A DNA stretch of 64,000 bases, taken from Scyliorhinus canicula (lineage: Eukaryota). The translations under genes were made by a program, and so were the position numbers. The stretch lies in NCBI RefSeq assembly GCF_902713615.1, contig NC_052172.1, positions 11,698,185-11,762,184 on the forward strand, in the 5' to 3' direction. Positions 311 through 55,910 of this stretch are shown one piece after another (position 1 is the stretch's first letter; each line of letters starts with the position of its first letter). The notes below the pieces were generated by a model. It was not told where the DNA came from. It ran no database searches and saw only the letters and a list, made by a program, of their open reading frames with translations.

Positions 311-317
311 AGGGAAT

Positions 318-1322
318 GGGGTTAGGGGGGCCTGCCCTGTGTCTGGGGTTAGGGGGGCCTGCCCTGTGTCTGGGGTTAGGGGGGCCTGCCCTGTGTCTGG
401 GGTTAGGGGGGCCTGCCCTGTGTCTGGGGTTAGGGGGGCCTGCCCTGTGTCTGGGGTTAGGGGGGCCTGCCCTGTGTCTGGGGTTAGGGGGGCCTGCCCT
501 GTGTCTGGGGTTAGGGGGGCCTGCCCTGTGTCTGGGGTTAGGGGGGCCTGCCCTGTGTCTGGGGTTAGGGGGGCCTGCCCTGTGTCTGGGGTTAGGGGGG
601 CCTGCCCTGTGTCTGGGGTTAGGGGGGCCTGCCCTGTGTCTGGGGTTAGGGGGGCCTGTCCTGTGTCTGGGGGGAATGGGGTTAGAGGCAATGCCCTGTG
701 TCTGGGGGGAATGGGGTTAGGGGGGCCTGCCCTGTGTCTGGGGGGAATGGGGTTAGGGGGGCCTGCCCTGTGTCTGGGGGGAATGGGGTTAGGGGGGCCT
801 GTGTCTGGGGGGAATGGGGTTAGGGGGGCCTGCCCTGTGTCTGGGGGGAATGGGGTTAGGGGGGCCTGCCCTGTGTCTGGGGGGAATGGGGTTAGGGGGG
901 CCTGTGTCTGGGGGGAATGGGGTTAGGGGGGCCTGCCCTGTGTCTGGGGGGAATGGGGTTAGGGGGTCTGCCCTGTGTCTGGGGGGGAATGGGGTTAGAG
1001 GGAATGCCCTGTGTCTGGGGGGAATGGGGTTAGGAGGCCTTGCCCTGTGTCTGGGGGGAGGGGAATGGGTTTAGGAGGCCTTGCCCTGTGTCTGGAGGAG
1101 GGGTAGGGGACCTGCCCTGTGTCCGGGGGGGGGGGGGGGGGGGGGAATGGGGTTAGATGGCCTTGCCCTGTGTCTGGGGTTAGGAGACCTGCCCTGTGTC
1201 TGGGGTTAGGAGACCTGCCCTGTGTCTGGGGTTAGGAGACCTGCCCTGTGTCTGGGGTTAGGAGACCTGCCCTGTGTCTGGGGAGGGGAATGAGGTTAGG
1301 GGGTCTTGCCCTGTGTCTGGGG
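318..1322 (+). repeat. 27-bp G-rich minisatellite (GGGGTTAGGGGGGCCTGCCCTGTGTCT)n, degenerating toward the 3' end
   Basis: Direct tandem periodicity of 27 nt, reflected in the LGLGGPALC 9-aa ORF repeats. Core units contain TTAGGG. Confidence 0.95.
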
Positions 1323-1983: not shown

Positions 1984-9380
<7,397 letters not shown>

Positions 9381-9864: not shown

Positions 9865-9911
9865 GAAAGCTGTTCACCCAGAGTCTCAGTGACATTGCAC
9901 CTGGAGCTTTC
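9865..9911 (+). promoter_or_regulatory. U1A polyadenylation inhibition element (PIE) in the SNRPA 3'UTR
   Basis: GAAAGC-UGUUCAC-CCAG-A-GUC-UCAGU-GAC-AUUGCAC-CUGG-A-GCUUUC: three stems and two 7x1 asymmetric loops, ending 22 nt before AATAAA. Same architecture as the human PIE. Confidence 0.88.
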
Positions 9912-9933
9912 AAGCTTATTGAACTAACAGATG

Positions 9934-9939
9934 AATAAA
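9934..9939 (+). terminator. Distal poly(A) signal of SNRPA
   Basis: AATAAA just after the PIE, with a GU-rich downstream element ttgttgaatgtgttt at ~9959-9973. Confidence 0.8.
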
Positions 9940-11012: not shown

Positions 11013-12813
11013 ATCTCACGAGGGAAAGCATTACCGGAAGTTCACGTCTGCTGGGTTTGGGCTGGACAGGTGATATCTTTGGACCCGGAGAGAGACTGGA
11101 ATGATGCAATGAGTGCGTTGGCTGTACATCTTGTCAAAGCAGCTGGAATTTTGAAGTGTGACACCAACACCCCCCCCCCCCCCCCCACCCCCACTAACAA
11201 CAGCCTTATCCTTTATTAAGCATAGTTTGCAGCTGGTTTCGTCAACTTGTTTTTTGGGTGAAAGGTGCTTACTGCTGGAGCCTCGGTCAAACTTCCAACA
11301 GAATGCCTAACCTTAATAGCAAACTTTCAGATTATGAAATTAAGTTAGGGAAAGGAACTGAGGAACATGTGTTTGTAACTATCTGTGAGAGTTGACTCCA
11401 GCATGCTGTTGCTACATTTCTCAATGCAGGTTTAATAAATTGTGGAACTCTGAAGGTGTGGGTGCACGGTGGGATCCAAACACTAGGCAGTACGGATATC
11501 CCAACGCAGCCTCTCCACACCATTGTGCCTCCTACACTCCTGCTGAATATTTCTACTTATACTGAGGAAAATATTGGCATATTTGGTGTCTCCCTCCCTC
11601 TGCTCTTCTCCTTTGTGACACTGGCTTTGCAGAGTTAATGTTGCTAGTTTGGTGCTGGATGGAGGTGGGATCTCCCTGACAGGGTGAGTGGTGGACGCAT
11701 GAGGGGAGATGCTGCTTTCGGATGAGTGGGACAGTCCCCATCTGTGTTATAACTTCAAGCAACAGCTGAGAACTGGCACTTGAAGCACTGATGGGGCAGA
11801 AACAGTGATCAACATGAAGAGTGGGACAGAGCTTTCTTCTGTGTCTAACCCAATTATCGGCTAGAGAGTGGCATAGGCTGCATGAGTGACCGAAATTGGA
11901 CTTGACTCCATCAATAAGATTAAATAGATGTATTACATGCAAAATATCAACTTTAAATGGTAAAAACAAAATAAATATTTACACTCTGGATGCCGAAGGA
12001 GGTCAGGGCTCGCAGTCAATGTTGTGAGCAATCGGCACACACCTCGCTTCACTCACCCTTGCTTTACATATGAATCAGTTGAGTCCTACCAGCAGGAAAC
12101 AAAAACTACACGGAGGGAAATCAGCAGAATGTAGCGTCCCTGCGCATGGGTAATCGTCAACAAAATGTCTTATGGGGGCCGCACTCAACCCAGATGGGCT
12201 GCATATGCACCCTACCCCCAGACCACAGGTTCCCCACCACTGATCCAACCCCGTGCTATACCTGTCCTGGGAGTGTTTGATGGGGACAGTGTAGAGGGAG
12301 CTTTACTCTGTATCTAATCCCGTGCTGTACCTGTCCTGGGAGTGTTTGATGGGGACAGTGAAGAGGGAGCTTTACTCTGTATCTAACCCCGTGCTGTACC
12401 TTTCCTGGGAGTGTTTGATGGGGACAGTGTAGAGGGAGCTTTACTCTGTATCTAACCCTATGCTGTACCTGTCCTGGGAGTGTTTGATGGGGACAGTGTA
12501 GAGGGAGCTTTACTCTGTATCTAACCCCGTGCTGTACCTTTCCTGGGAGTGTTTGATGGGGACAGTGTAGAGGGAGCTTTACTCTGTATCTAACCCTGTG
12601 CTGTACCTGTCCTGGGAGTGTTTGATGGGGACAGTGTAGAGGGAGCTTTACTCTGTATCTAACCCCGTGCTGTACATGTCCTGGGAGTGTTTGATGGGGA
12701 CAGTGTAGAAGGAGCTTTACCCTGTATCTAACCCTGTGTTGTACCTGTCCTGGGGGTGTTTGATGGGGACAGTGTAGAGGGAGCTTTACTCTGTAACCCC
12801 ATGCTGTACCTGT

Positions 12814-13210
12814 TGTCATAATATCCACTCATGTAAATCATGAGATGCAGACAGGCAGTGATTGACATACAGGATAACCAATGAACACACACGACACAGA
12901 ATAACCAATCACCAGACAGGACACCACCACTATGAAACCCACAGAGCATGAAGGCTCTCTCTCACAGGACACGGAGATAGTCGCAGTGCACAGGCCAATG
13001 AACATCATCACCATGTGATAGAGAGCTCATCTGGTCAAGCCAGTAGGAGATTATCTGTTAGGTTAATAGAGTGTCAACCCACAGCAGATTATGTACAGCA
13101 ATCAACAGGTTCAATAAATAAGTGTTGGACCATCTCCTGTGTCGGAAGGCTGATTCTCATTTTACTGCATCCAGTTGCAGTCGATGTTAGATAACACAGA
13201 TAACACATCA
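12814..13210 (+). mobile_element. Solo LTR copy 1 (TG...CA, 5-bp TSD CCTGT)
   Basis: cctgt|TGTCATAAT...AACACATCA|cctgt; internal AATAAA near 13113. Confidence 0.8.
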
Positions 13211-13789: not shown

Positions 13790-14226
13790 ATCTAACCCCA
13801 TGCTGTACCTGTCCTGGGAGTGTTTGATGTGGATAGTGTAGAGGGAGCTTTACTCTGTCTCTAACCCAGTGCTGTACCTGTCCTGGGAGTGATTGATGGG
13901 GACAGTGTAGAAGGAGCTTTACTTTGTATCTAACCCCGTGCTGTACCTGTCCTGGGAGTATTTGATGGGTACAGTGTAGAGGGAGCTTTACTCTGTATCT
14001 ATCCCCGTGCTGTACCTGTCCTGGGAGTGTTTGATGGGGGTAGTGTGGAGGGAGCTTTACTCTGTATCTAACCCCATCCTGTACCTGTCCTGGGAGTGTT
14101 TGATGGGGGCAGTGTGGAGGGAGCTTTACTCTGTGTCTAACCACGTGTTGTACCTGTCCTGGGAGTGTTTGATGGGTACAGTGTAGAGGGAGCTTTACTC
14201 TGTATCTAACCCCATGCTGTACCTGT

Positions 14227-14628
14227 TGTCATAATATCCACTCATGTATATCATGAGATGCAGACAGGCAGTGATTGACATACAGTATAACCAATGAACA
14301 CACACGACACAGAATAACCAATCACCAGACAGGACACCACCACTATAAAACCCACAGGGCATGAAGGCTCTCTCTCTCTCACAGGACACGGAGATAGTCG
14401 CAGTGCACAGGCCAATGAACATCATCACCATGTAATAGAGAGCTATCCTGGTCAAGCCAGTAGGAGGTTATCAGTTAGGTTAATAGAGTGTCAACCCACA
14501 GCAGATTATGTACAGCAATCAACAGGTTCAATATAACAGTGTTGGACCATCTCCTGTGTCGGAAGCCTGTTTCTCATTTTACTGCATCCAGTTGCAGTCG
14601 ATGTTAGAGCAACACAGATAACATATCA
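14227..14628 (+). mobile_element. Solo LTR copy 2 (same family and same satellite position as copy 1)
   Basis: cctgt|TGTCATAAT...AACATATCA|cctgt; internal TATAAAA near 14344. Confidence 0.8.
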
Positions 14629-14850
14629 CCTGTCCTGGGAGTGTTTGATGGGGACAGTGTAGAGGGAGCTTTACTCTGTATCTAAACCCGTGCTGTACCT
14701 GTCCTGGGAGTATTTGATGGGGACAGTGTAGAGGGAGCTTTACTCTGTGTCTAACCCGTGCTGTACCTGTCCTGGGAGTGTTTGATGGGGACAGTGTAGA
14801 GGGAGCTTATTCTGTATCTAACCCTGTGCTGTACCTGTCCTGGGAGTGTT

Positions 14851-17477
14851 TAGAACATAGAACATTACAGCGCAGTACGGCGGCCCTCGATGTTGCGCCG
14901 ACCTGTGAAACCATCTGAAGCCTACTTGACCTACACTATTCCATTTTCATCCATATGTCTATCCAGCGACCACTTAAATGCCCTTAAAGTTGGCGAGTCT
15001 ACTACTGTTGCAGGCAGGGCGTTCCACACCCCTACTACTCTCTGAGTAAAGAAACTGCCTCTGACATCTGTCCTATATCTACTTCCCCTCAATTTAAAGC
15101 TATGTCCCCTCGTGTTGGTCATCACCATCCGAGGAAAGAGACTCTCAGTGTCCACCCTATCTAACCCTCTGACTATCTTATATGTCTCTATTAAGTCACC
15201 TCTCAGCTTTCTCCTCTCTAACGAAAACAACCTCAAGTCCCTGAGCCTTTCCTCGTAAGACCTTCCCTCCATATCAGGCAACATCCTAGTAAATCTCCTC
15301 TGAACCCTTTCCAAAGCTTCCACATCCTTCCTATAATGTGGTGACCAGAACTGCACGCAGTACTCCAGGTGCGGCCGCACCAGAGTTATGTACAGCTGCA
15401 GCATGACCTTGTGGCTCCGAAACTCAATCCCCCTACTGATAAAGGCTAGCACACCATATGCCTTCTTAACAGCCCTATTAACCTGGGTGGCAACTTTCAG
15501 GGATTTGTGTACCTGGATGCCGAGATCTCTCTGTTCATCTACACTACCAAGAAACTTGCCATTAGCCCAGTACTCTGCATTCCTGTTACTCCTTCCAAAG
15601 TGAACCACCTCACACTTTTCCGCATTAAACTCTATCTGCCACCTCTCAGCCCAGCTCTGCAGCTTATCTATGTCCCTCTGTATTCTATAACATCCTTCAG
15701 CACTATCCACAACTCTACCGACCTTCGTGTCATCTGCAAATTTACTAACACATCCTTCTACACCCTCTTCCAGGTCATTTATAAAAATGACAAACAGCAG
15801 TGGCCCCAAAACAGATCCTTGCGGTACACCACTAGTAACTGAACTCCAGGATGAACATTTGCCATCAACCACCACCCTCTGTCTTCTTTCAGCTAGCCAA
15901 TTACTGATCCAAACCGCTAAATCACCTTCAATCCCATACTTCCTTATTTTCTGCAATAGCCTACCATGTGGAACCTTATCAAACGCCTTACTGAAATCCA
16001 TATACACCACACCAACCGCTTTACCCTCATCCACCTGTTTGGTCACCTTCTCAAAAAACTCAATAAGGTTTGTGAGGCATGACCTACCCTTCACAAAACC
16101 GTGTTGACTATTGCTAATCAACTTGTTCTTTTCAAGATGATTATAAACCCTATCTCTTATAACCTTTTCCAACATTTTACCCACAACCGAAGTAAGGCTC
16201 ACAGGTCTATAATTACCAGGGTTGTCTCTACTCCCCTTCTTGAACAAGGGGACAACATTTGCTATCCTCCAGTCTTCCGGCACTATTCCTGTCGACAAAG
16301 ATGACATAAAGATCAAGGACAAAGGCTCTGCAATCTCCTCCCTGTCTTCCCAGAGAATCCTAGGGTAAATTCCATCTGGCCCAGGGGACTTATCTATTTT
16401 TACACTTTCCAAAATTGCTAACACCTCCTCCTTGTGAACCTCAATTCCATCTAGCCTGGTTGACTGAACCTGAGTATTCTTCTCGACAACATTGTCTTTC
16501 TCCAGTGTAAACACTGACAAAAAATATCCGTTTAACGCTTCCCCTATCTCCTCTGATTCCACACACAACTTTCCACTACTATCCTTGATTGGCCCTAATC
16601 TTACTCTAGTCATTCTTTTGTTCCTGATATACCTATAGAAAGCCTTAGGGTTTTCCTTGATCCTATCAGCCAATGACTTTTCGTGTCCTCTCCTCGCTCT
16701 TCTTAACTCTCCCTTTAGGTCCTTCCTGGCTAACTTATAACTCTCAAGTGCCCTAACTGAGCCTTCATGTCTCATCCTGACATAAGCCTTCTTCTTCCTC
16801 TTGACAAGTGCTTCAACTTCCTTAGTAAACCACGGTTCCCTTGCTCGACAACTTCCTCCCTGCCTGACAGGTACATACTTATCAAGGTCACGCAGTAGCT
16901 GTTCCTTGAAAAAGCTCCACATTTCGATTGTACCCATCCCCTGCAGTTTCCTTCCCCATCCTATACATCCTAAATCTTGCCGAATAGCATCATAATTGCC
17001 TTTCCCCCAGCTATAATTCTTGCCTTGCGGTATACACCTATCCCTGCCTATTGCTAAAGTAAACATAACCGAATTGTGATCACTATCACCAAACCTGGCC
17101 GGGTTCATTACCCAGTACCAAATCCAATGTGGCCTCGCCCCTTGTTGGCCTGTCTACATACTGTGTCAGAAAACCCTCCTGCACACACTGCACAAAAACT
17201 GACCCATCTATAGTACTCGAACTATAGTATTTCCAGTCAATATTTGGAAAGTTAAAGTCCCCCATAACAACTACCCTGTTACTCTCGCTCCTGTCGAGAA
17301 TCATCTTTGCAATCCTTTCCTCTACATCTCTGGAACTATTCGGAGGCCTATAGACAACTCCCAACAGGGTGACCTCTCCTCTCCTGTTCCTAACCTCGGC
17401 CCATACTACCTCAGTAGACGAGTCCTCAAACGTCCTTTCTACCGCCGTAATACTTTCCTTGATTAACAATGTCACCC

Positions 17478-17519
<42 letters not shown>

Positions 17520-18650: not shown

Positions 18651-19297
18651 TGATGGGGACAGTGTAGAGGGAGCTTTACTCTGTATCCAACCCCGTGCTG
18701 TTCCTGTCCTGGAGTGTTTGATGGGGACAGTGTAGAGGGAGCTTTACTCTGTATCTAACCCCGTGCTGTACCTGTCCTGGGAGTGTTTGATGGGGACAAT
18801 GTAGAGGGAGCTTTACTCTGTACCTAACCCCGTGCTGTACCTGTCCTGGGAGTGTTTGATGGGGACAATGTAGAGGGAGCTACACTGTATCTAACCCCCA
18901 GTTGTACCTGTCCCGGGAAAGTGCCATGAAAAGGAACAGCCATTTGTGAGGGTACAGTGGTGCATTGTAAAGAAAGTTTTGAAACCAGACCCCTCACCAT
19001 TCCAATCAAAAGCTAAGTCCAAATCAAACATCAGAATTAGAAAAATATGTTTATCCCGGGGGGCGGATGGTAGCCACAAACAGTCCTGTGCTTAAAGAGT
19101 TAGTTCATTTATTTTCGCTTCCAGCCAGTTTTTGCCGGGAAGGACATTCCACTTGGATTTTCTTTGGCTTGCAAAGGCAATTGGTGAAAAGCTGGGGGCT
19201 CCCTGCTGGGGAGGTGGCCACAGACTGGGAGTTTTAATCCAGACCTGTTCTTCTGGAGCCCCTGTGGGTCGAGAGTAGGCGCTGGGGTTGCAACAAG

Positions 19298-19433
19298 ATG
19301 CAGCTGGAGGTTTCCCTGACCGTCCGGGCCCTCTGCCTGCTTGTTTTCTGCGCCACAGGCGTCCTCTGCACCAGGGGGGAGGAGGTCCATCGACTGGCCC
19401 AAAGGAAGCTGTGCGCAGACGAGGAATGCAGCC
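19298..19433 (+). CDS. MIA: MIA exon 1 (signal peptide, KLCADEECS)
   Basis: ATG at 19298, donor AGC C|gtgagt. Confidence 0.88.
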
Positions 19434-22400
19434 GTGAGTTCAAAGAAAACCTTTAAAAAACAATGCAGCCGAGGAGGGGGACACTGCAGGGGGGTTGGCT
19501 TTAAATAGCACTCGGGGATGTGAGCAGCCTTGTCGACTATATGTCTTGGTTTAACTGTAGAATCTGAAGTGTTGCTTTCAAGTATTTGTCCTGTTCCTTG
19601 GAGAAAATTATTATTAAATCTGCCACCACCACTTTTAGGCGCTGCTTTCCAGGTTGTCAGACTTGTCAGGTTTTAACTCTCCTTATAACGTTTTACAGCA
19701 GAAAATGAGGCCCTTCGACCCATCGATTCCATGCTGGCCGTCAAGCACCTATATTTTTTTATAAATTTAGAGTACCCAATTCATTTTTTCCGATTAAGGG
19801 GCAATTTAGCGTGGCCAATCTACCCACCCTGCACATCTTTGGGTTGTGGGGGCGAAACCCACACAGACACGGGGAGAATGTGCAAACTCCACACGGACAG
19901 TGACCTAGAGCCGGGATCGAACCTGGGACATCGGCGCCGTGAGGCAGCAGTGCTAACCACTGCGCCGCCCTTCAAGCACCTATTCTCACCCCATTTTCCA
20001 GCACTTGGTCCGTGGCCTTGTCTGCTGTGGAATTTCAGAATGTTCATCTAAATGTTTCTTAAATGTCGTGAGGGCTCCCATCTCTACCACCCTTTCAGGC
20101 AGCGAGTACCAGATTCCCACCACCTTCTGGGTTAAAAGGTTTTTCCTCGAATCCCCTCATAATCTCCTGCTCCTTACCTTACTTAAATCTACGTCCCCTG
20201 GGGATCCAATGGCGATCGAACCTACCTATCCACCCTATGTACGAGCGTTATAATTTTGTACACATCGCCTTCTCTTTTTTTTAATATAAATTTAGAGGAC
20301 ACAATGATTTTTTTCCAATTAAGGGGCAATTTAGCGTGGCCAATCCACCTAACCTGCACATATTTGGGTTAGAATTTTACAGTGCAGAAGGAGGCCATTC
20401 AGCCCATCAAGTCTGCACCGGCCCTTGGAAAGAGCACCCGACCAAAGCCCATACTGCCACCCTATCCTCACACCACCACTCTATCCCCTTAACCCCACCT
20501 AACTTTTTTTGGACACGAAGGGCAATTTAGCACGGCCATTCCACCTAACCTGCACATCTTTGGACTGTGGGAGGAAATCGGAGCACCCGGACGAAACCCA
20601 CGCGCACACGGGGAGGATGTGCAGACTCCGCGCAGACAGTGACCCAAGCCGGGAATCGAACCTGGGACCCTGGAGCTGTGGAGCAACTGTGCTAACCACT
20701 GTGCTAACGTGCTGCACGGCTGCGGGGGTGAAACCCACGCAGGCACGGGAGACTGTGCAAACTCCACACGGACAGTGTCCCGGGGCTAGGATCGGACCCG
20801 GGTCCTCAGCTCCGTAGGCAGCAGTGCTGACCACTGCGCCACCGTGCCGCCCCCTTCTCAACCTTGCCCCTCGCCTGAGGTGTGGTGTCCCTCAGGTTAA
20901 ATCACCACCAGTCAGCTCTACCCCCTCAAAGGGGAAACAAGCCTAGCGCCTGGGACGAGGGTGACTTTACTGTACAATCAGATGCTTCCTGTGGTGTGGT
21001 GACCAGAACTACACACAGTGCTCTAACTGTTACCTAACAGGCGTTTTATACAGTCCTCCCACCTGTATTTGTTTCTCTTAGCGGCGTCCTCTATTTTACC
21101 AACCCCTCCACCAATGGAGACAGATTTCTCCTTATTTAGAATAAATAAAACCCTTTGCAAATGTGATGATTATTGGACCTTGTTGGGGAGTTTTATTTTC
21201 CCTGGGATGTTCCTGTCGGGGCTGGTTTAGCTCAGTGGGCTAGACAGCTAGTTTGTGATGCAGAACAAGGCCAGCAGCCCGGGTTCAATTCCCGTACCAG
21301 CTGACCCGAACAGGCGCCGGAATGTTGCGGCTAGGGGCTTTTCACAGTAACTTCATACTTGTGACAATAAAAGGTTATTATAATTAGGGAGTGAGGCAGC
21401 CTTTGCTCAGGGGATTTGCTGGGTATGCCAGTCCATCACCGTCTCTGTTTAATGTGTGAGCCTAGACGGGGAATGTCGGCAGGCTTATACTCTTGTTAAA
21501 GATATTTCACAACCAAGACACATCCTATCCCAATCCTGGAATTTGGATAGGGATCAAGCGCAGGCATGTTGTCTGACTTCATTCCCCCCACCAAAGTATT
21601 GACCAATAATGCCTGGGTTATACTGAACACCGTTCAGAACTAAAGGTGCCTACTCTAGACACTGCACGCTGTGATAAAACACTGTTTTCCATTTAGATCC
21701 AATTTCTATGGCTCGGGCTCTGGCAGATTACACGGCTCCTGACTGCAGGTTCATCAACATCCGCCAAGGACAGATCGTTTATATTTACGGAAAACTCAAA
21801 GGAAAGGGACGCGACTACTGGCAAGGGACCGTGAGTCTGAGGCACCGAGCTCTCTCTCCACAATGTTTGCTTTAGGTGTTCTGTGCTGATATTGATTGCT
21901 GCTCCCTCACTAACGTTTGGCTCTGGGGTTGAGCACCACACCTTGGATGGCAATCTTCAGTGTTTGGACTGTTCGTCTGTCTGGTTTTAGTGCCAGACTG
22001 ACCAGTGCCTGTGCCAGACCTGACCAGTGTCTGCGTCACACTGAACAGCATATGTGTCAGACTGACCAGTGTGTGTCAGACTGACCAGTGTGTGTCCGAC
22101 TGACCAGTGTGTGTGTCAGACTGACCAGTGGGTGTGTCAGACTGACCAGTGTGTGTCAGACTGACCAGTGTCTGTGTGACTGACCAGTGTGTGTGTGTCA
22201 GACTGACCAGTGTGTGTGACTGACCAGTGTGTGTGTGTCAGACTGACCAGTGTGTGTGACTGACCAGTGTGTGTGTGTCAGACTGACCAGTGTGTGTGTG
22301 TCAGACTGACCAGTCTGTGTCAGACTGACCAGTGTGTGTGTATCAGACTGACCAGTGTGTGTGACTGACCAGTGTGTGTGTGTCAGACTGACCAGTGTGT

Positions 22401-25400
22401 GTGTCAGACTGACCAGTGTGTGTGTGTCAGACTGACCAGTGTGTGTGTATCAGACTGACCAGTGTGTGTGACTGACCAGTGTGTGTGTCAGACTGACCAG
22501 TGTGTGTCAGACTGACCAGTGTGTGTGTGTGTCAGACTGACCAGTGTGTGTGTATCAGACTGACCAGTGTGTGTGACTGACCAGTGTGTGTGTGTCAGAC
22601 TGACCAGTGTGTGGCAGACTGACCAGTGTGTGTGTCAGACTGACCAGTGTCTGTGTCAGACTGACCAGTGTGTGTGTGTCAGACTGACCAGTGTGTGTGT
22701 GTCAGACTGACCAGTGTCTGTGTCAGACTGACCAGTGTGTGTCAGACTGACCAGTGTGTGTGTGACTGACCAGTGTGTGTGTGTCAGACTGACCAGTGTG
22801 TGTCAGACTGACCAGTGTGTGTGTGTCAGACTGACCAGTGTGTGTGTCAGACTGACCAGTGTGTGTGTGTCAGACTGACCAGTGTGTGTGTGTCAGACTG
22901 ACCAGTGTGTGTCAGACTGACCAGTGTGTGTGCGTCACACTGACCAGTGTGTGTCAGACTGACCAGTGTGTGTCAGACTGACCAGTGTGTGTCAGACTGA
23001 CCAGTGTGTGTCAGACTGACCAGTGTGTGTGTCAGACTGACCAGTGTGTGTCAGACTGACCAGTGTGTGTCAGACTGACCAGTGTGTGTGTCAGACTGAC
23101 CAGTGTCTGTGTCAGACTGACCAGTGTGTGTGTCAGACTGACCAGTGTGTGTGTGTCAGACTGACCAGTGTGTGTCAGACTGACCAGTGTGTGTGTCAGA
23201 CTGACCAGTGTCTGTGTCAGACTGACCAGTGTGTGTGTGTCAGACTGACCAGTGTGTGTGTGTCAGACTGACCAGTGTGTGTGTGTCAGACTGACCAGTG
23301 TGTGTCAGACTGACCAGTGTGTGTCAGACTGACCAGTGTGTGTGTGTCAGACTGACCAGTGTGTGTCAGACTGACCAGTGTGTGTGTGTCAGACTGACCA
23401 GTGTGTGTCAGACTGACCAGTGTGTGTGTCAGACTGACCAGTGTGTGTGTGTCAGACTGACCAGTGTGTGTCAGACTGACCAGTGTGTGTGTGTCAGACT
23501 GACCAGTGTGTGTGTGTCAGACTGACCAGTGTGTGTCAGACTGACCAGCGTGTGTCAGACTGACCAGTGTGTGTGTGTCAGACTGACCAGTGTGTCAGAC
23601 TGACCAGTGTGTGTGTCAGACTGACCAGTGTGTGTGTCAGACTGACCAGTGTGTGTCAGACTGACCAGTGTGTGTCAGACTGACCAGTGTGTGTGTCAGA
23701 CTGACCAGTGTGTGTGTGTCAGACTGACCAGTGTGTGTCAGACTGACCAGTGTGTCTGTGTCAGACTGACCAGTGTGTCTGTGTCAGACTGACCAGTGTC
23801 TGTGTCAGACTGACCAGTGTGTGTGTCAGACTGACCAGTGTGCGTGTCAGACTGACCAGTGTCTGTGTCAGACTGACCAGTGTGTGTGTGTCAGACTGAC
23901 CAGTGTGTGTGTGTCAGACTGACCAGTGTGTGTGTCAGACTGACCAGTGTGTGTGTCAGACTGACCAGTGTCTGTGTGTCAGACTGACCAGTGTGTGTGT
24001 GTCAGACTGACCAGTGTCTGTGTGTCAGACTGACCAGTGTGTGTCAGACTGACCAGTGTGTGTCAGACTGACCAGTGTGTGTCAGACTGACCAGTGTGTG
24101 TGTCAGACTGACCAGTGTGTGTGTGTCAGACTGACCAGTGTGTGTGTCAGACTGACCAGTGTGTGTGTCAGACTGACCAGTGTCTGTGTGTCAGACTGAC
24201 CAGTGTGTGTGTGTCAGACTGACCAGTGTCTGTGTGTCAGACTGACCAGTGTGTGTGTGTCAGACTGACCAGTGTGTGTCAGACTGACCAGTGTGTGTCA
24301 GACTGACCAGTGTGTGTGTCAGACTGACCAGTGTGTGTATGTCAGACTGACCAGTGTGTGTGTCAGACTGACCAGTGTGTGTCAGACTGACCAGTATGTG
24401 TCAGACTGACCAGTGTGTGTGTGTCAGACTGACCAGTGTGTGTCAGACTGACCAGTGTGTGTGTGTCAGACTGACCAGTGTGTGTCAGACTGACCAGTGT
24501 GTGTCAGACTGACCAGTGTCTGTGTCAGACTGACCAGTGTGTGTGTCAGACTGACCAGTGTGTGTCAGACTGACCAGTGTCTGTGTCAGACTGACCAGTG
24601 TGTGTGTGTCAGACTGACCAGTGTGTGTGTGTCAGACTGACCAGTGTGTGTGTGTCAGACTGACCAGTGTGTGTGTGTCAGACTGACCAGTGTCTGTGTC
24701 AGACTGACCAGTGTGTGTGTCAGACTGACCAGTGTCTGTGCCAGACTGACCAGTGTGTGTCAGACTGACCAGTGTGTGTGTCAGACTGACCAGTGTGTGT
24801 CAGACTGACCAGTGTCTGTGTCAGACTGACCAGTGTGTGCCAGACTGACCAGTGTGTGTGTCAGACTGACCAGTGTGTGCCAGACTGACCAGTGTGTGTC
24901 AGACTGACCAGTGTGTGTGTCAGACTGACCAGTGTGTGTGTGTCAGACTGACCAGTGTCTGTGTCAGACTGACCAGTGTGTGTGTCAGACTGACCAGTGT
25001 CTGTGTCAGACTGACCAGTGTGTGCCAGACTGACCAGTGTCTGTGTCAGACTGACCAGTGTGTGCCAGACTGACCAGTGTGTGCCAGACTGACCAGTGTG
25101 TCAGACTGACCAGTGTCTGTGTGAGACTGACCGGTGTGTGCCAGACTGACCAGTGTGTGCCAGACTGACCAGTGTGTGTGTTAGACTGACCAGTGTGTTA
25201 GACTGACCAGTGTGTGTGTGTCAGACTGACCAGTGTGGGTCAGACTGACCAGTGTGTGTCAGACTGACCAGTGTCTGTGTCAGACTGACCAGTGTGTGTG
25301 TCAGACTGACCAGTGTGTGTCAGACTGACCAGTGCGTCTCAGACTGACCAGTGTGTCTCAGACTGACCAGTGTCTGTGTCAGACTGACCAGTGTGTGTGT

Positions 25401-28400
25401 GTCAGACTGACCAGTGTGTGTGTGTCAGACTGACCAGTGTGTGTGTGTCAGACTGACCAGTGTCTGTGTCAGACTGACCAGTGTGTGTGTCAGACTGACC
25501 AGTGTCTGTGCCAGACTGACCAGTGTGTGTCAGACTGACCAGTGTGTGTGTCAGACTGACCAGTGTGTGTGTCAGACTGACCAGTGTCTGTGTCAGACTG
25601 ACCAGTGTGTGCCAGACTGACCAGTGTGTGTGTCAGACTGACCAGTGTGTGCCAGACTGACCAGTGTGTGTCAGACTGACCAGTGTGTGTGTCAGACTGA
25701 CCAGTGTGTGTGTGTCAGACTGACCAGTGTCTGTGTCAGACTGACCAGTGTCTGTGTCAGACTGACCAGTGTGTGCCAGACTGACCAGTGTGTGCCAGAC
25801 TGACCAGTGTGTCAGACTGACCAGTGTCTGTGTGAGACTGACCGGTGTGTGCCAGACTGACCAGTGTGTGCCAGACTGACCAGTGTGTGTGTTAGACTGA
25901 CCAGTGTGTTAGACTGACCAGTGTGTGTGTGTCAGACTGACCAGTGTGGGTCAGACTGACCAGTGTGTGTCAGACTGACCAGTGTCTGTGTCAGACTGAC
26001 CAGTGTGTGTGTCAGACTGACCAGTGTGTGTCAGACTGACCAGTGCGTCTCAGACTGACCAGTGTGTCTCAGACTGACCAGTGTCTGTGTCAGACTGACC
26101 AGTGTGTGTGTGAGCGACTGACCAGTGTCTGTGTCAGACTGACCAGTGTGTGTCAGACTGACCAGTGTGTGTCAGACTGACCAGTGACTGTGTCAGACTG
26201 ACCAGTGACTGTGTCAGACTGACCAGTGTGTGTGTCAGACTGACCAGTGTGTGTCAGACTGACCAGTGTGTGTGTCAGACTGACCAGTGTGTGTGTGTCA
26301 GACTGACCAGTGTGTGTCAGACTGACCAGTGTGTGTCAGACTGACCAGTGTGTGTCAGACTGACCAGTCTGTGTCAGACTGACCAGTGTGTGTGTCAGAC
26401 TGACCAGTGTGTGTGTGTCAGACTGACCAGTGTGTGTCAGACTGACCAGTGTGTGTGTGTCAGACTGACCAGTGTGTGTGTCAGACTGACCAGTGTGTGT
26501 GTGTCAGACTGACCAGTGTGTGTGTCAGACTGACCAGTGTGTGTCAGACTGACCAGTGTGTGTGTGTCAGACTGACCAGTGTGTGTGTGTCAGACTGACC
26601 AGTGTGTGTGTCAGACTGACCAGTGTGTGTCAGACTGACCAGTGTGTGTCAGACTGACCAGTGTGTGTCAGACTGACCAGTGTGTGCCAGACTGACCAGT
26701 GTGTGTCAGACTAACCAGTGTGTGTGTGTCAGACTGACCAGTGTCTGTGTCAGACTGACCAGTGTGTGTCAGACTGACCAGTGTCTGTGTCAGACTGACC
26801 AGTGTGTGTGTCAGACTGACCAGTGTGTGTGTGTCAGACTGACCAGCGTGAGTGTGTCAGACTGACCAGTGTGTGTCAGACTGACCAGTGTGTGTGTGTC
26901 AGACTGACCAGTGTGTGTGTGTCAGACTGACCAGTGTGTGTCAGACTGACCAGTGTGTGTGTGTCAGACTGACCAGTGTGTGTGTGTCAGACTGACCAGT
27001 GTGTGTGTCAGACTGACCAGTGTGTGTCAGACTGACCAGTGTGTGTCAGACTGACCAGTGTGTGCCAGACTGACCAGTGTGTGTCAGACTGACCAGTGTG
27101 TGTGTGTCAGACTGACCAGTGTGTGTCAGACTGACCAGTGTGTGTCAGACTGACCAGTGTGTGTCAGACTGACCAGTGTCTGTGTCAGACTGACCAGTGT
27201 GTGTGTGTCAGACTGACCAGTGTGTGTGTCAGACTGACCAGTGTGTGTGTCAGACTGACCAGTGTGTGTCAGACTGACCAGTGTGTGTGTCAGACTGACC
27301 AGTGTGTGTCAGACTGACCAGTGTCTGTGTCAGACTGACCAGTGTGTGTCAGACTGACCAGTGTCTGTGTCAGACTGACCAGTGTGTGTGTGTCAGACTG
27401 ACCAGTGTGTGTGTCAGACTGACCAGTGTGTGTGTCAGACTGACCAGTGTGTGTGTCAGACTGACCAGTGTGTGTGTCAGACTGACCAGTGTGTGTGACT
27501 GACCAGTGTGTGTGTGTCAGACTGACCAGTGTGTGTGTCAGACTGACCAGTGTGTGTGACTGACCAGTGTGTGTGTGTCAGACTGACCAGTGTGTGTGTG
27601 TCAGACTGACCAGTGTGTGTGTGTCAGACTGACCAGTGTCTGTGTCAGACTGACCAGTGTGTGTGTGACTGACCAGTGTGTGTGTGACTGACCAGTGTGT
27701 GTGTGTCAGACTGACCAGTGTGTGTGTGTCAGACTGACCAGTGTCTGTGTCAGACTGACCAGTGTGTGTCAGACTGACCAGTGTGTGTGTGACTGACCAG
27801 TGTGTGTGTGTCAGACTGACCAGTGTCTGTGTCAGACTGACCAGTGTGTGTCAGACTGACCAGTGTGCGTGTGTCAGACTGACCGGTGTGTGAGACTGAC
27901 CAGTGTGTGTGTCAGACTGACCAGTGTGTATCAGACTGACCGTTGCTTCTCTGAGACTGACCAGTGTATGTGTGTTTAGGTCCAAGGTGATTATTTCGGG
28001 GAGCAGTCAACATCTCTTGGATTTTTCCCAAAGTCGATTGTGAGAGAGATCCAACATCTGGGGACTGAGCTCGTGGAGATGCCAACAGTCGTAAGAGCAT
28101 TTGACTTTATTGCACTTATTTATTTTATCGTCATAGCCTATCCATGTGTCCCGGCAGAGAGGAGGGAACTAGATGGCATCTCAGGGAATCAGCGCTCACT
28201 GCAGAGCACACTCAAAAGCCTCGTACAATGCACTTTACTCAGCAGTAAACTGCTTCGTCTCTGGGCTCTCCCTCCTGCCTCGAGGAAGCTGATGTTGGGA
28301 AACCTGAAACAGGAACAGAAAATGCTGGAAACACCCAGCAAGTCATTCAGAGCCAGAAACTGGATCCTGTCCTTAAGGGCCCTGCTCCTGCTGTGTGCTT

Positions 28401-28993
28401 ACAGCACGTTCTGTTTGTGCTTCACAAATGCCACACTGATTGTGGGACCGGGCTGCAGGAACGAGGTGGGATCAGTAGGAATGGCCGGGGGGGACAGCAG
28501 TAAGTGGCAAAACAACCAGGCCTCGCACCTTTAGACGGGCAGAAAGCGAATGCTGGAGGGATGATGCGACTAATACAATACATAATACAATACAATATGA
28601 TGTAATACAGTGGTGAATGGTAGCAGCAATACATTCACCACAAGGAAATCAGCCAGGGTTCCTGCTCCACTGTCCAGCGAGGACCCAGCGGTTAGGTATA
28701 CGTGCGTTGGCTTTGACTGAGATGGTGCATTTCAATAGACTGATGCCACACCAGGTCCGGGACCGCACATGCAGGACGATCTCTTGGGTGAGGGAGCAGT
28801 GGGTGACGCGTGACCTTGTGGGGAGCCTCTGTCTTCAGTGTGGGATTTGGGGAGTGGTGGGGGGGGGCGGGGGGGAAGGGGGTTGACAGGGGGAGGGGGG
28901 CTAGTATGGGAAATTTAGTGGTCAAAACGAGTGTATTACAGAGTGTTTGACAATGAACGTCTGTGTTTGTAGGACTGGGATTTCTACTGTTAG
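19298..28993 (+). CDS. MIA: Melanoma inhibitory activity / CD-RAP (secreted SH3-like protein), join(19298..19433,21697..21830,27980..28090,28973..28993), 133 aa
   Basis: MQLEVSLTVRALCLLVFCATGVLCTRGEEVHRLAQRKLCADEECSHPISMARALADYTAPDCRFINIRQGQIVYIYGKLKGKGRDYWQGTVQGDYFGEQSTSLGFFPKSIVREIQHLGTELVEMPTVDWDFYC. Signal peptide, four conserved Cys, MIA-type SHPISMA/VQGDY/WDFYC motifs. Adjacent to SNRPA as in mammals. Confidence 0.92.
21697..21830 (+). CDS. MIA: MIA exon 2
   Basis: atttag|AT CCA ATT TCT ATG ... GGG ACC|gtgagt; PISMARALADYTAPDCRF. Confidence 0.93.
21990..27977 (+). repeat. ~6-kb satellite of CAGACTGACCAG plus a variable (TG)n tract (mostly ~17-23 bp units, roughly 300 copies) filling MIA intron 2
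   Basis: Directly visible. Variable TG length, and higher-order duplication with period 711 around 25.1-26.1 kb. Confidence 0.97.
27980..28090 (+). CDS. MIA: MIA exon 3
   Basis: gtttag|GTC CAA GGT GAT TAT ... ACA GTC|gtaaga. Confidence 0.92.
28973..28993 (+). CDS. MIA: MIA exon 4 (DWDFYC*)
   Basis: ttgtag|GAC TGG GAT TTC TAC TGT TAG; AATAAA at 29126-29131. Confidence 0.88.
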   Translation, partial: DWDFYC

Positions 28994-29125
28994 TAAAAGA
29001 AGAGGACGAGAGAGGAACCATTCTCCCAACAACAGAAAAGCAGCTGGTGCCATGGAGTCACTGTCCTGAGTTATGACTAGAATCCGCTGTAAACTGCATT
29101 GCCAGTGACTGGTGACAACTGTTGA

Positions 29126-29131
29126 AATAAA
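29126..29131 (+). terminator. MIA poly(A) signal
   Basis: AATAAA ~130 nt after the stop codon. Confidence 0.6.
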
Positions 29132-31061
29132 TAGGATTAGAACCGTTTGGCTGCTCGCGTCTGTATTTGATATTTTACCAGTTTATACATTTAGTGACTG
29201 TCAGGTCGGAGGTTTCTCTGGAAACATCGTCCAGTGTCCCAAATATCTGGAAGCACTTCCTAGTTCAGGGAATGCAGTGACAACTGTGTCTGGTGCCCCG
29301 TGAGCCTGAGATTTCCTGGAGGGGGGAGAAGTAGGAGGTACTGTCCGCCTCGCACTTGCTCTTTCACCAAGCAGGATTGTCCCCAGGAGGGCAATCGCTC
29401 CATAATCCCAGTGGGAATCCCTTTGAGGGTGTTGCTGGTTTAGCTCACTGAGCTAAATCACTGGCTATTAAAGCAGACCAAGCAGGCCAGCAGCACGGTT
29501 CGATCCCGTACCAGCCTCCCCGAACAGGCGCCGGAATGTGGCGACTAGGGGCTTTTCACAGTAACTTCATTGAAGCCTACTCGTGACAATAAGCGATTTT
29601 CATTTTCATTTCTTCTGTAATCCCAGTGGGAATTCTCTGGGAGATTATTGCCCCATAATCCCAGTGGGAATCCTTTGAGCACCATAATCCCAGCTGGTGT
29701 ACTCTGTGCTGTTTTGCCCTGTCGACAGGCTTCACTGATATTGGGTGCTGATTGAGCAGAGGAAGAAACAGGCAGCTTCCATACCTCATTGTTGTGGCTT
29801 CTCAAACTCTGCACTTCGGTAAATTACAGCAGCTGTCCCCCCCCCCCCCCCCCCGGAGATATTTTATTGTAGATTATTAATGCAATGGTGGTCTCTCCTC
29901 TCCAATTGGGAGTTGACTGTTGTGGGATTAGGGCTATTTTGGGAGGCTGGAGGTGATATCTTTTCATTGTAGTAATTGCGCTCTTCCACAGGGTGGCACT
30001 TGCGAGCTGTTAGCCATACCTTGGGGGTTTTGTTCCAGCTCTTTTCAACAGCGTTAAAGAGACAGAAGTAAGAACTAGCTGCCTGTTGGCTTTTTGCAGG
30101 GACCCACCCGGATGTACCCAAGTCCAGGGAACTTGGGACATAGGCTGGAAGAGAAAAGAGTCAAGTCTGCCATTTGTCTGCCAAGGTACTAATGGAGTGT
30201 AACCAGCTCAATCCTGTGTGCAGGAACCTGTTGTATCCTGAACGAGTAACCCCACAGCTTGCCTCTTATTCTGAGTCTGTCATCCATGGATCCAGACTCC
30301 CTCTCCCCCAGACCCCCACTCTCCCCCCCCTCCTACGATCCCCCAGCTCACCCCCCCTGATTCCCCCATCTCTTCCCAACACCTTCCTCCCTCTAACCAA
30401 CTCGCCCATCTCCCTGACCCCCCCCCCCCCATTCCATAAGAACTAGGAGCAGAATTAGGCCATTCGGCCTATCGGCTCTGCTCCGCCATTGGTTCATCCC
30501 CATTCTTCTGCCTTCTCCCCATAACCCCTGATCCCCTTATTAATCAAGAACCTATCTATCTGTCTTAAAGACATTCAGTGATTTAGCCACCGCCTTCCGC
30601 GGCAGAGTTCCACAGATTCACACCCTCTGCCTGAAGAAATTCCTCCTCATCTCTGTTTTAAAGGATCGTCCCTTTAAATGAAATGAAATGAAAATCGCTT
30701 ATTGTCACGAGTAGGCTTCAATGAAGTTACTGTGAAAAAACCCTAGTCGCCACATTCCGGCGCCTGTCCGGGGAGGCTGGTATGGGAATTTAGTCTGAGA
30801 TTGTGCCCTCTGCTTCTAGCTTTTCCAACAAATGGGAACATCCTCTCCACGTCCACTCTATCCGGGCCTCGCAGTATCTTGTACGTTTCAATAAAAACCC
30901 CCCTCATCCTTCTAAACTCCCCCTTCCCGATTACCCTCACCAGCTCACCCACCCACCTCCCTCCCTTCCCCGACTCCTCCCTGCCATCAACACCACCCTC
31001 CCCCGACTCCTCTCCCTTTCCTGCCCCCTCGACCCAACACCCCTCTCTCCCCATCCAGTCC

Positions 31062-54336: not shown

Positions 54337-55910
54337 GGGGGGGACATCCCCAAGATCGGGGGGGGGGGACATCCCCAAGATCGGGGGGGGGGGGACATCC
54401 CCAAGATCGGGGGGGGGGGGGACATCCCCAAGATCGGGGGGGGGGACACATCCCCAAGATCGGGGGGGGGGGGGGACATCCCCAAGATCGGGGGGGGGAC
54501 ACATCCCCAAGATCGGGGGGGGGGGGACATCCCCAAGATCGGGGGGGGGGGACATCCCCAAGATCGGGGGGGGGGACATCCCCAAGATCGGGGGGGGGGG
54601 GACATCCCCAAGATCGGGGGGGGGGCATCCCCAAGATCGGGGGGGGGGGGGACATCCCCAAGATCGGAGGGGGGGGGACATCCCCAAGATCGGGGGGGGG
54701 GACATCCCCAAGATGGGGGGGGGGACATCCCCAAGATCGGGGGGGGGGGGGGGGACATCCCCAAGATCGGGGGGGGGACATCCCCAAGATCGGGGGGGGG
54801 GACCATCCCCAAGATCGGGGGGGGGACCATCCCCAAGATCGGGGGGGGGACCATCCCCAAGATGGAGGGGGGGGGACATCCCCAAGATCGGGGGGGGGGG
54901 GGACATCCCCAAGATCGGGGGGGGGGGACCATCCCCAAGATGGAGGGGGGGGGAACCATCCCCAAGATGGAGGGGGGGGACCATCCCCAAGATGGGGGGG
55001 GGGGGCATCCCCAAGAGGGGGGGGGGGACCATCCCCAAGATGGGGGGGGGGGACCATACCCAAGATCGGGGGGGGGGGGGGGGGGGGAAACCATCCCTAA
55101 GATCGGAGGGGGGAACCATCCCCAATATCGGGGGTGGGGGGGAGAAACCATCCCCAAGATCGGTGGTGGGGGGTAAACCATCCCCAAGATGGGGGGGGGG
55201 GTGAAGCCATCCCCAAGACAGGGGGGGGGGGCGCATCCATCCCCAAGACAGGGGGGGGCATCCATCTCCAAGAGGGGGGGGGGGGGCATCCATCTCCAAG
55301 ACAGGGTGTCATCCATCGCTGAGAGGAGGTGCATCCATCCCCAAGACAGGGGGGGGGGGGGGGGGGGGGGGGCAAGTGGGCATCCATCCCTAAGATGGGG
55401 GGCATCCATCCCTAAGACGGGGGGGGGGGCAGGACATCCATCCCCAAGACAGGGGGGGGGGACATCCATCCCCAAGACAGGGGGGGACATCCATCCCCAA
55501 GACGGGGGGGGGGGGGACATCCATCCCCGAGACAGCGCGGGGGGGGGGGGGGGACATCCATCCCCAAGATGAGGGGGGTGCATTCATCCCCACGACGGGA
55601 GGGGGGGGGCATCCATCCCCTAGGGGGGTGGGGAGCATCCATCCCTAAGGCGGGGGAGGGGGGTATCCATCCGCAATACAGGAGGGGGGGTTGGGCATCC
55701 ATCTCCAAGACAAGGAGGGGGCATCCATCCCCAAGGCATGGGGAGCATCCATCCCCAAAGGGGGGTGGGGGCAGGCATCCATCACCAAGACAAGGGGGTC
55801 AGGCATCCATCACCAAGACAAGGGGGTCAGGCATCCATCACCAAGACAAGGGGGTCAGGCATCCATCACCAAGACAAGGGGGTCATCCATCCTCAAGACA
55901 AGGGGGCAGG
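54337..55910 (+). repeat. G-rich minisatellite (Gn ACATCCCCAAGATC)n evolving into (Gn CATCCATCCCCAAGACA)n
   Basis: Directly visible; ~22-30 bp units with variable poly-G. Confidence 0.95.

What the first reader, a model, noticed from the sequence alone, without database searches (positions are those of the whole stretch)
21990..27979. MIA intron 2 is a 6-kb array of branch-point/AG decoys, and its last units form the real 3' splice region
Seen in sequence: nearly every one of ~300 units contains ACTGAC (matching the yUnAy branch consensus), immediately followed by CAG and a UG tract. The array runs up to the exon-3 acceptor. The only candidate branch points are repeat units (A27960 at -20, or A27939, whose unit has lost its CAG and gained a pyrimidine run). 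The acceptor has tgtatgtgtgtttag instead of a polypyrimidine tract. Established knowledge: UG tracts bind TDP-43/CELF and repress nearby 3' splice sites, as in CFTR exon 9. Inference: the satellite looks like a tandem amplification of this intron's own branch/acceptor segment. It could act as an SF1/U2/TDP-43 sponge or a length-dependent splicing rheostat for a cartilage gene.
Basis: partly seen in the sequence, partly recalled or inferred. Interest (0 to 1): 0.7.

Follow-up and report, generated by a model that had tools for sequence, protein, structure and literature searches.

The report
Splice-acceptor minisatellite filling shark MIA intron
Intron 2 of a shark cartilage gene (MIA) is almost wholly a 6-kb tandem repeat whose last copy supplies the working branch point and acceptor; RNA from four studies shows it is spliced cleanly, so it is most likely a very large but tolerated repeat at an exon edge, not a regulator.

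Summary
At 21990-27979 there are about 289 head-to-tail units of 19, 21 or 23 nt, of the form CTGACCAG(TG)nTCAGA, all on the + strand. They fill 97% of intron 2 of a four-exon MIA orthologue. There are 286 ACTGAC and 561 AG inside the array. No copy of the unit lies elsewhere in the window.

The last unit (27957-27979) is a near-intact unit whose final AG is the exon-3 acceptor. Exon 3 itself shows no homology to the unit.

RNA from four runs of four studies joins the end of exon 2 (21830) directly to 27980. The two nearest cryptic AGs were not seen in use, nor was intron-tail retention or exon-3 skipping.

By the AG-exclusion-zone rule, A27960 is the only good branch candidate. A27939 is disfavoured.

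The best reading is a splice-signal minisatellite at an exon edge, on the acceptor side. It was probably seeded from the intron's own last ~21 nt, and it is tolerated because the exon-adjacent unit is chosen.

The sponge and rheostat ideas have no support here, but array length variation was not tested.

This scan has already noted similar exon-edge arrays on other DNA of this genome (ERGIC3, LBH, ASPDH, LAMTOR1, FPGT, MHC-I). Those notes are unchecked and name the small-spotted catshark.

The parts
19298..19433 (+). MIA exon 1, coding part (start codon, signal peptide, through ...CADEECS; ends in phase 1 before GTGAGT)
   Evidence: Translation and donor read directly
21697..21830 (+). MIA exon 2
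   Evidence: Codons 21699-21830 match human MIA structure 1hjd residues 14-56, E 7e-16. Donor is GGGACC|GTGAGT. Its last 30 nt are the loose end found before 27980 in RNA.
21831..27979 (+). Intron 2 (6149 nt, GT..AG)
   Evidence: The joint is inferred from loose ends in four runs.
21831..21957 (+). Unique 5' part of intron 2 (127 nt), all that is left of a once-short intron
   Evidence: No unit homology. Holds a CACTAAC at 21909-21915.
21958..21989 (+). Degenerate edge unit(s) in front of the array as called by TRF
   Evidence: Local alignment to the consensus scores 24, p about 0.009 against random window pieces
21990..27979 (+). Minisatellite of about 289 units, CTGACCAG(TG)nTCAGA, G-rich on the sense strand (GC skew +0.23)
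24605..26113 (+). A block of about 0.75 kb (about 36 units) present twice in tandem (offsets 770/772 and 711), a sign of growth by multi-unit unequal exchange
   Evidence: Exact 100-mers shared at those offsets. Matching rare variants lie 711 nt apart.
27936..27956 (+). Penultimate unit, the most diverged of all (14/21 by my hand alignment to the consensus). It has no CAG after CTGACC, a pyrimidine run at 27942-27952, and ends in a poor GAG (27953-27955).
27957..27979 (+). Last unit, a near-intact 23-nt unit (one substitution, and TCAG changed to TTTAG). It carries the working branch candidate and the acceptor.
   Evidence: Register shown. TRF period-21 row runs to 27973.
27960..27960 (+). Most likely branch-point A (CUGAC, 19 nt before the G of the acceptor AG)
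   Evidence: It is the only A in yUnAy context within the AG exclusion zone plus 15 nt (27950-27977). Rule from PMC1431707, letters. Inferred, not mapped.
27963..27964 (+). AG 3-4 nt after the branch A, expected to be bypassed as too close. If used it would add 15 nt ending in an in-frame stop.
   Evidence: No loose ends or reads were seen there.
27978..27979 (+). Authentic acceptor AG (UAG|G)
   Evidence: Loose ends at 27980 equal to 21801-21830 in X1, X5, X9 and X22, including 7 raw reads
27980..28090 (+). MIA exon 3 (37 codons, phase 0 at both ends)
   Evidence: Matches human MIA 1hjd residues 58-91, E 1e-5. RNA depth and joints.
28091..28972 (+). Intron 3 (882 nt, GT..AG), with a G/T-rich acceptor much like that of intron 2
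   Evidence: Joint 28090->28973 in all four runs. Letters.
28973..29143 (+). MIA exon 4: DWDFYC plus stop (28973-28993), then 3' UTR with AATAAA at 29126. RNA depth ends at about 29143.

Best explanation
This is a minisatellite at an exon edge, on the acceptor side of intron 2 of the shark MIA gene. A segment of about 21 nt, running from the branch-point motif (CUGAC) through a short UG tract to the AG, has been copied head to tail about 289 times. It most likely began as the last ~21 nt of a once-short intron of about 150 nt. It then grew by slippage in the TG tract and by unequal exchange of multi-unit blocks. The exon-adjacent unit is still the working 3' splice region. U2 most likely pairs at CUGAC with A27960 bulged. 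The CAG 4 nt downstream is too close to be used, and the next AG (27978-27979, UAG|G) is taken. The roughly 560 upstream AG and 286 branch-like motifs stay silent for three likely reasons. No exon with a donor and enhancers follows them (exon definition). Their context (CAG|A, CAG|U, no U run) is poorer. Any product that kept array sequence would carry stop codons and be degraded. Shown: the anatomy, the register with the acceptor, and clean use of the acceptor in RNA. Inferred: the branch point, the origin, the reason the decoys are silent, and that the array is a tolerated passenger.
For: Array anatomy and its uniqueness in the window. The last unit is in register, with its AG as the acceptor. 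MIA identity of the flanking exons. In one search, four runs of four studies all carry the exon-2 end (21801-21830) directly before 27980. X5 and X9 each give a single contig that holds exon 3 and exon 4 and runs on upstream of 27980. The X1 exon2-exon3 contig (depth 215) runs unbroken to 28091. X22 raw reads give 7 exon2|exon3 reads, and no reads or loose ends at 27955 or 27964 or over 27940-27979. No loose ends were listed at exon 4 (28973), which is where a transcript lacking exon 3 would show; the listing threshold is 3 reads. In X1, intron 3 is covered at depth about 4.5-4.8 while nothing lies on the intron-2 tail. Block duplications show ordinary array dynamics. Both array edges are degenerate, as in ordinary minisatellites. 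Tandem arrays make up 17.5% of this window, and a second array ends 27 nt before an SNRPA acceptor. Precedents where only the exon-adjacent copy of a reiterated splice site is used: PMC1557585. AG bypass and the exclusion-zone rule: PMC1431707.
Against: Exon 3 shares nothing with the unit, unlike the classic cases where the terminal unit spans the junction, so the seeding event is not proven. The real acceptor is no richer in pyrimidines than the decoys (0.50 against a mean of 0.46), so sequence alone does not explain the choice. Cryptic use deep in the array, products removed by nonsense-mediated decay, lariat branch sites and array length variation could not be examined. Contigs show presence, not absence. 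The CTGACCAGTG core is more uniform (278/289 intact) than the TGTCAGA part (235/289), which could hint at constraint, although block duplication inflates such counts.
Confidence: 0.68

Rival explanations
1. Length-dependent rheostat. The number of units tunes MIA output, because a longer array slows or weakens recognition of the exon-3 acceptor or lowers expression, as reported for the ABCA7 intron-18 VNTR.
For: Precedent: the ABCA7 25-bp array at an exon edge has 12-427 units, and its length correlates with skipping of the next exon and with lower expression (PMC5954066). The MIA acceptor lacks a normal pyrimidine tract and sits in UG-rich sequence. Block duplications show that the array changes length.
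Against: No exon-3 skipping, no cryptic AG use and no intron-tail retention were seen in four runs, one of them with exon depth above 200. No second allele or individual of a different length was examined, so nothing links length to output.
Confidence: 0.12
2. Protein or snRNP sponge. In chondrocytes the abundant MIA pre-mRNA or its lariat soaks up TDP-43/CELF (on UG tracts) or SF1/U2 (on CUGAC) and so alters splicing of other genes.
For: There are 135 TG tracts of 4 or more repeats and 286 strong branch-like motifs per transcript. UG repeats at a 3' splice site bind TDP-43 in CFTR exon 9 (PMC1524908, PMC2709582).
Against: There is no direct evidence of any kind. Only one tract reaches (TG)6, and most are (TG)2-5. 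Excised introns are normally short-lived. Many other large intronic arrays exist in this genome, which argues for a neutral process. The array RNA folds no better than shuffles.
Confidence: 0.04
3. Independent origin. The array arose from an internal (TG)n-based or transposon-derived repeat elsewhere in the intron, or is a genome-wide satellite. It spread until it overwrote the old branch and pyrimidine tract, and the last unit was only then recruited as the 3' splice region.
For: The exon-3 start has no unit homology. A yUnAy match plus an AG is expected by chance in a sizeable share of random 21-mers (own estimate). The penultimate unit's pyrimidine run (27942-27952) could be a relic of the old tract. 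In another intron of this genome an array motif was traced to a transposon end (unchecked note).
Against: The unit's terminal AG is in exact register with the acceptor AG, and the last 23 nt differ from a unit by one substitution and one small change. The unit is absent from the other 58 kb on both strands.
Confidence: 0.2

Closest known systems
Minisatellites at exon edges that reiterate a splice donor: human F7 IVS7 (37 bp), IFI6 (6-16) intron 2, CBS IVS13, LMNB2, PDGF (PMC1557585)
   Same: A tandem array lies inside an intron, its terminal unit carries the authentic splice signal, identical or near-identical pseudo-sites follow, and normally only the exon-adjacent site is used.
   Different: Those are on the donor side, their first unit includes the last exon bases, and they have 5-25 copies. 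Here the array is on the acceptor side, reiterates branch motif plus AG, includes no exon bases, and has about 289 copies filling 97% of the intron.
ABCA7 intron-18 VNTR (25 bp, 12-427 units, up to 10.7 kb; PMC5954066)
   Same: Similar unit size and total length, it abuts an exon and includes a splice signal, and it is the precedent for a length effect on splicing of the next exon.
   Different: It is on the donor side, and the effect was shown by comparing alleles in people. No allele comparison exists here, and no skipping was seen.
UG-tract 3' splice sites: CFTR intron 8 (TG)m(T)n with TDP-43 (PMC1524908, PMC2709582). Also human apoA-II exon 3, whose GU tract stands in for the pyrimidine tract (paper cited in those reference lists but not held; the detail is from my own knowledge).
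   Same: The acceptor is preceded by UG-rich sequence in place of a normal pyrimidine tract.
   Different: The alternating G/U stretch next to the MIA acceptor is interrupted by an A, and its longest uninterrupted part (9 nt) is much shorter than (TG)11-13. Binding of TDP-43 was not tested, and no skipping was seen.
Acceptor-side arrays noted earlier by this scan in the same genome (ERGIC3 35 nt x 9, LBH 42 nt x 24, ASPDH about 32 acceptor look-alikes); unchecked AI notes
   Same: Same genome, tandem copies of a 3' splice signal, read as tolerated. For ASPDH, transcripts from three studies splice past the array.
   Different: The ERGIC3 and LBH units include exon bases, and ASPDH lies inside the intron away from the exon. 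The MIA array is 10-30 times larger and stops exactly at the AG.

Membership tests
Splice-signal minisatellite at an exon edge (F7/IFI6/CBS/ABCA7 type) | Tandem array of units of 10-100 nt inside an intron | tested here: met
   About 289 units of 19-23 nt at 21990-27979
Splice-signal minisatellite at an exon edge (F7/IFI6/CBS/ABCA7 type) | The terminal unit carries the authentic splice signal, so the array is in register with the junction | tested here: met
   The last unit 27957-27979 ends in the acceptor AG and carries the branch candidate. Caveat: no exon bases are part of the unit.
Splice-signal minisatellite at an exon edge (F7/IFI6/CBS/ABCA7 type) | The splice signal is reiterated in the other units | tested here: met
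   286 ACTGAC and 561 AG in the array (548 of all 568 intron-2 AG are CAG)
Splice-signal minisatellite at an exon edge (F7/IFI6/CBS/ABCA7 type) | Only, or mainly, the exon-adjacent site is used | tested here: met
   All four runs join 21830 to 27980. Nothing was seen at 27955 or 27964.
Splice-signal minisatellite at an exon edge (F7/IFI6/CBS/ABCA7 type) | Copy number varies between alleles (VNTR) | not tested
Short contigs cannot size a 6-kb array.
TDP-43-regulated UG-tract acceptor (CFTR exon 9 type) | A long uninterrupted (UG)n directly upstream of the acceptor | tested here: not met
   The last unit reads ...GTGTATGTGTGTTTAG. The alternating run is broken by an A and is no more than 9 nt long.
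TDP-43-regulated UG-tract acceptor (CFTR exon 9 type) | Skipping of the downstream exon | tested here: not met
   No loose ends were listed at 28973 that would mark a transcript lacking exon 3, in any of four runs. Sensitivity is limited: 15 junction reads in the raw run and a listing threshold of 3 reads.
TDP-43-regulated UG-tract acceptor (CFTR exon 9 type) | TDP-43 binds the tract | not testable with these tools
   Needs CLIP or a band-shift
Genome-wide satellite | The same unit occurs at many unrelated loci | tested here: inconclusive
   None in the other 58 kb of the window on either strand. No tool here searches the whole genome, and a blank in the findings index means nothing.
MIA (melanoma inhibitory activity / CD-RAP) gene | SH3-like MIA domain sequence and a four-exon layout next to SNRPA | tested here: met
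   Exon 2 against 1hjd gives E 7e-16, and exon 3 gives E 1e-5. Exon 1 ends ...CADEECS and exon 4 codes DWDFYC plus stop. An SNRPA exon lies upstream. Exons were searched one by one, and the joined model was not built.

The most novel reading that the evidence does not exclude
The array is a variable-length tuner. In shark chondrocytes the number of branch/UG units sets how fast or how well the weak exon-3 acceptor is found, or how much UG-binding protein and U2 is held on the very abundant MIA pre-mRNA. Array length would then modulate output of a cartilage gene, an acceptor-side counterpart of the ABCA7 VNTR.
Probability: 0.08. Interest if true: 0.7.

Novelty: new member of a known kind. Interest (0 to 1): 0.33.

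Why it matters
It is a natural competition experiment. About 289 near-identical branch-plus-AG modules lie in a row in an expressed gene, and the spliceosome uses the last one. That fits choice of the 3' splice site from the exon side, not first-come scanning from the donor. It offers an acceptor-side counterpart to the F7 intron used to study donor choice. Together with the other arrays noted in this genome, it suggests that short shark introns often balloon by amplifying their own ends. This matters for gene annotation, for intron-size evolution and for splice-site predictors. As a regulator it has no support so far.

Tried and rejected
1. Homology between the exon-3 start and the unit, which would make this a junction-spanning repeat: none found (local alignment p about 0.9 against shuffles and window pieces).
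2. Sequestration of the decoys in hairpins formed by the near-palindromic GTCAGACTGAC: the array RNA folds no better than dinucleotide shuffles (z -0.38 for interior units, +1.08 for the last units plus the exon start).
3. A shared ancestral '...TTTAG' state at both array edges: the 5' flank against the last two units is not significant (p 0.09-0.2).
4. Pfam on single exons: no hits, as the pieces are too short. My first PDB search of exon 2 was out of frame, which was my slip, corrected.
5. Rfam over 19000-29500: nothing.
6. Findings index by sequence: blank, which means nothing. By five words: blank.
7. Paper search on catshark tandem repeats: nothing useful. The apoA-II paper is not held.
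8. A27939 as branch point: disfavoured, because GAG (27954-27955) and CAG (27963-27964) lie 15 and 24 nt downstream of it and would intercept a scan.
9. Laying reads across the whole intron was not possible, because of the 6,000-letter limit and the long repeat. The exon2-exon3 joint therefore rests on loose ends.
10. The joined spliced protein model was not built or searched. Exons were searched by reference one at a time.
Full report
**What is there**

The window has no N. Tandem Repeats Finder reports a single array at 21990-27973 with period 19/21, about 289 copies and 86-87% matches.

Splitting at CTGACC gives 287-289 units of the form CTGACCAG(TG)nTCAGA. Their lengths are 19 (99 units), 21 (92), 23 (78) and 17 (13), and they differ by the number of TG.

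ACTGAC occurs 286 times inside the array and 9 times in the other 58 kb. ACTGACCAG occurs 282 times inside and never outside. A 20-mer consensus with up to three mismatches hits 285 times, always on + and always inside; shuffles give 0.01.

The array is G-rich on the sense strand, with GC skew +0.23. It contains a block of about 0.75 kb that is present twice in tandem (24605-25402 and 25375-26113), plus smaller block repeats. It has therefore grown by multi-unit unequal exchange as well as by TG slippage.

Both edges are degenerate. One or two decayed units lie in front of the TRF start, from about 21958 (p about 0.009). The last three units each carry changes.

**The gene**

Each exon was searched by reference on its own. 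The joined spliced model was not built or searched.

- Exon 2 (21697-21830; codons 21699-21830) matches human MIA structure 1hjd residues 14-56 with E 7e-16.
- Exon 3 (27980-28090) matches residues 58-91 with E 1e-5.
- Exon 1 (start codon 19298 to 19433) codes a signal peptide and ends ...CADEECS.
- Exon 4 (28973-28993) codes DWDFYC and a stop, with AATAAA at 29126.

An SNRPA exon lies upstream. Earlier notes of this scan place the U1A 3' UTR element at 9865-9939.

Intron 2 is 21831-27979 (6149 nt). Only 127 nt at its 5' end are unique. The intron was therefore probably about 150 nt long before the array grew.

**Register with the splice site**

The last 23 nt of the intron (27957-27979) are a near-intact 23-nt unit. 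There is one G-to-A change in the TG tract, and the unit's terminal TCAG has become TTTAG. The acceptor AG is therefore the AG of a repeat unit.

The periodicity stops there. The first 12-30 nt of exon 3 align to the unit no better than shuffles or random window pieces (p 0.5-0.97). This differs from the classic cases and from the ERGIC3 and LBH arrays noted in this genome, where the unit includes exon bases.

**RNA evidence**

I laid four runs from four studies on 27940-29200. Three were kept as contigs and one as raw oligo-dT reads.

- In all four runs, the sequence that hangs off before 27980 is identical to 21801-21830, the end of exon 2.
- All four runs show the GT..AG joint 28090->28973.
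- In the raw run, 7 reads cross exon2|exon3 at 27980 and 15 cross exon3|exon4.
- Nothing lies on 27940-27979, and no loose ends appear at the two nearest cryptic AGs (27955, 27964). If used, these would add 24 or 15 nt ending in an in-frame stop.
- No loose ends were listed at exon 4, so no transcript lacking exon 3 was seen above the threshold of 3 reads.
- In X1 the exon depth is 215-316, and intron 3 is present at about 4.5-4.8. The contig carrying the exon2-exon3 joint runs unbroken to 28091, and nothing covers the intron-2 tail.

The acceptor therefore does not look slow or repressed. Two limits apply: contigs show presence, not absence, and products removed by nonsense-mediated decay would be missed.

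**Branch point**

By the AG-exclusion-zone rule, the first upstream AG beyond -12 is 27963-27964. AGs within about 12-15 nt after a branch are bypassed, so the search covers the zone plus 15 nt, which is 27950-27977 (PMC1431707).

The only A there in a yUnAy context is A27960 (CUGAC), 19 nt before the G of the acceptor. A27939 is disfavoured, because GAG at 27954-27955 and CAG at 27963-27964 lie 15 and 24 nt downstream of it and would intercept a scan. This is inference, since no lariat data were available.

**Why the last unit is chosen**

The real site is not richer in pyrimidines than the decoys. The fraction over -20..-5 is 0.50, against a decoy mean of 0.46. The longest pyrimidine run is 3, against 2 for most decoys.

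It differs from the decoys in three ways:
- Its context is UAG|G with a U3 run, against CAG|A and CAG|U.
- Its branch-to-AG spacing is 19 nt, against 14-18.
- A real exon follows it, with a GTAAGA donor 111 nt downstream.

Exon definition is therefore the most likely reason for the choice (established knowledge; not tested here).

Hairpin masking of the decoys was tested and dropped. Folding energies equal those of shuffles.

**Comparison with what is known**

Minisatellites whose terminal unit carries the authentic splice site, followed by silent pseudo-sites, are known on the donor side. Examples are F7 IVS7, IFI6, CBS, LMNB2 and PDGF (PMC1557585).

The ABCA7 intron-18 VNTR has 25-bp units, 12-427 copies, and a length that correlates with skipping of the next exon (PMC5954066).

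UG tracts at acceptors that bind TDP-43 are known from CFTR exon 9 (PMC1524908, PMC2709582).

The MIA array is an acceptor-side member of the first kind. It is unusually large and stops exactly at the AG. It fails the CFTR-type tests that could be run, because the UG run next to the acceptor is short and interrupted and no skipping was seen.

This scan has already noted arrays at exon edges in the same genome: ERGIC3, LBH, ASPDH, LAMTOR1, FPGT and MHC-I. Those notes are unchecked, and the species name, small-spotted catshark, comes from them and was not verified here.

In this window, tandem arrays make up 17.5% of the DNA, and a 41-nt array ends 27 nt before an SNRPA acceptor. The background rate of such arrays is therefore high.

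**Verdict**

The reading that the last units form the real 3' splice region is supported. A local origin from the intron's own end is plausible, at roughly two to one over an independent origin. The sponge and rheostat readings have no support but are not excluded, because length variation, lariats and deep cryptic use were not testable here.

Noticed in passing
window 7687-8397 and about 8425: A 41-nt x 17.7 array in an SNRPA intron ends only about 27 nt before the acceptor of the exon coding [18 protein letters not shown]... This is a second array close to a 3' splice site in the neighbouring gene.
   Followed up: partly
window 12243-12924, 13790-14337, 14628-14851, 18651-18918: The same 69-nt tandem unit recurs at four places between SNRPA and MIA. 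At two of them it is followed by the same 27-nt x 2 repeat. This looks like a duplicated block, or a mobile element with internal repeats.
   Followed up: no
window 317-1288 and 54337-55915: Large G-rich minisatellites (26-36 nt and 25-28 nt units). Together with the others, tandem arrays cover about 17.5% of the window.
   Followed up: no
window 28960-28972: The MIA intron 3 acceptor (tctgtgtttgtag|G) is G/T-rich much like the intron 2 acceptor, although no array lies there. A weak, UG-flavoured pyrimidine tract may be the ancestral style of this gene.
   Followed up: partly
window 21850-21876 and 21909-21915: The unique 5' part of intron 2 holds a strong pyrimidine tract plus TAG only 46 nt after the donor, and a CACTAAC that matches the yeast branch consensus TACTAAC at 6 of 7 positions. 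These may be relics of the old short intron, and they now lie 6 kb from the acceptor.
   Followed up: no
window 28072, 29092, 29135: Exonic and UTR differences between runs: C>T at 28072 in 13 of 17 raw reads, A>G at 29092 in one contig set, and G>A at 29135. They would be usable as markers for allele-specific expression tests.
   Followed up: no
window 17475-17513 and 63976-64000: A 39-nt poly-C run and a terminal poly-G run.
   Followed up: no
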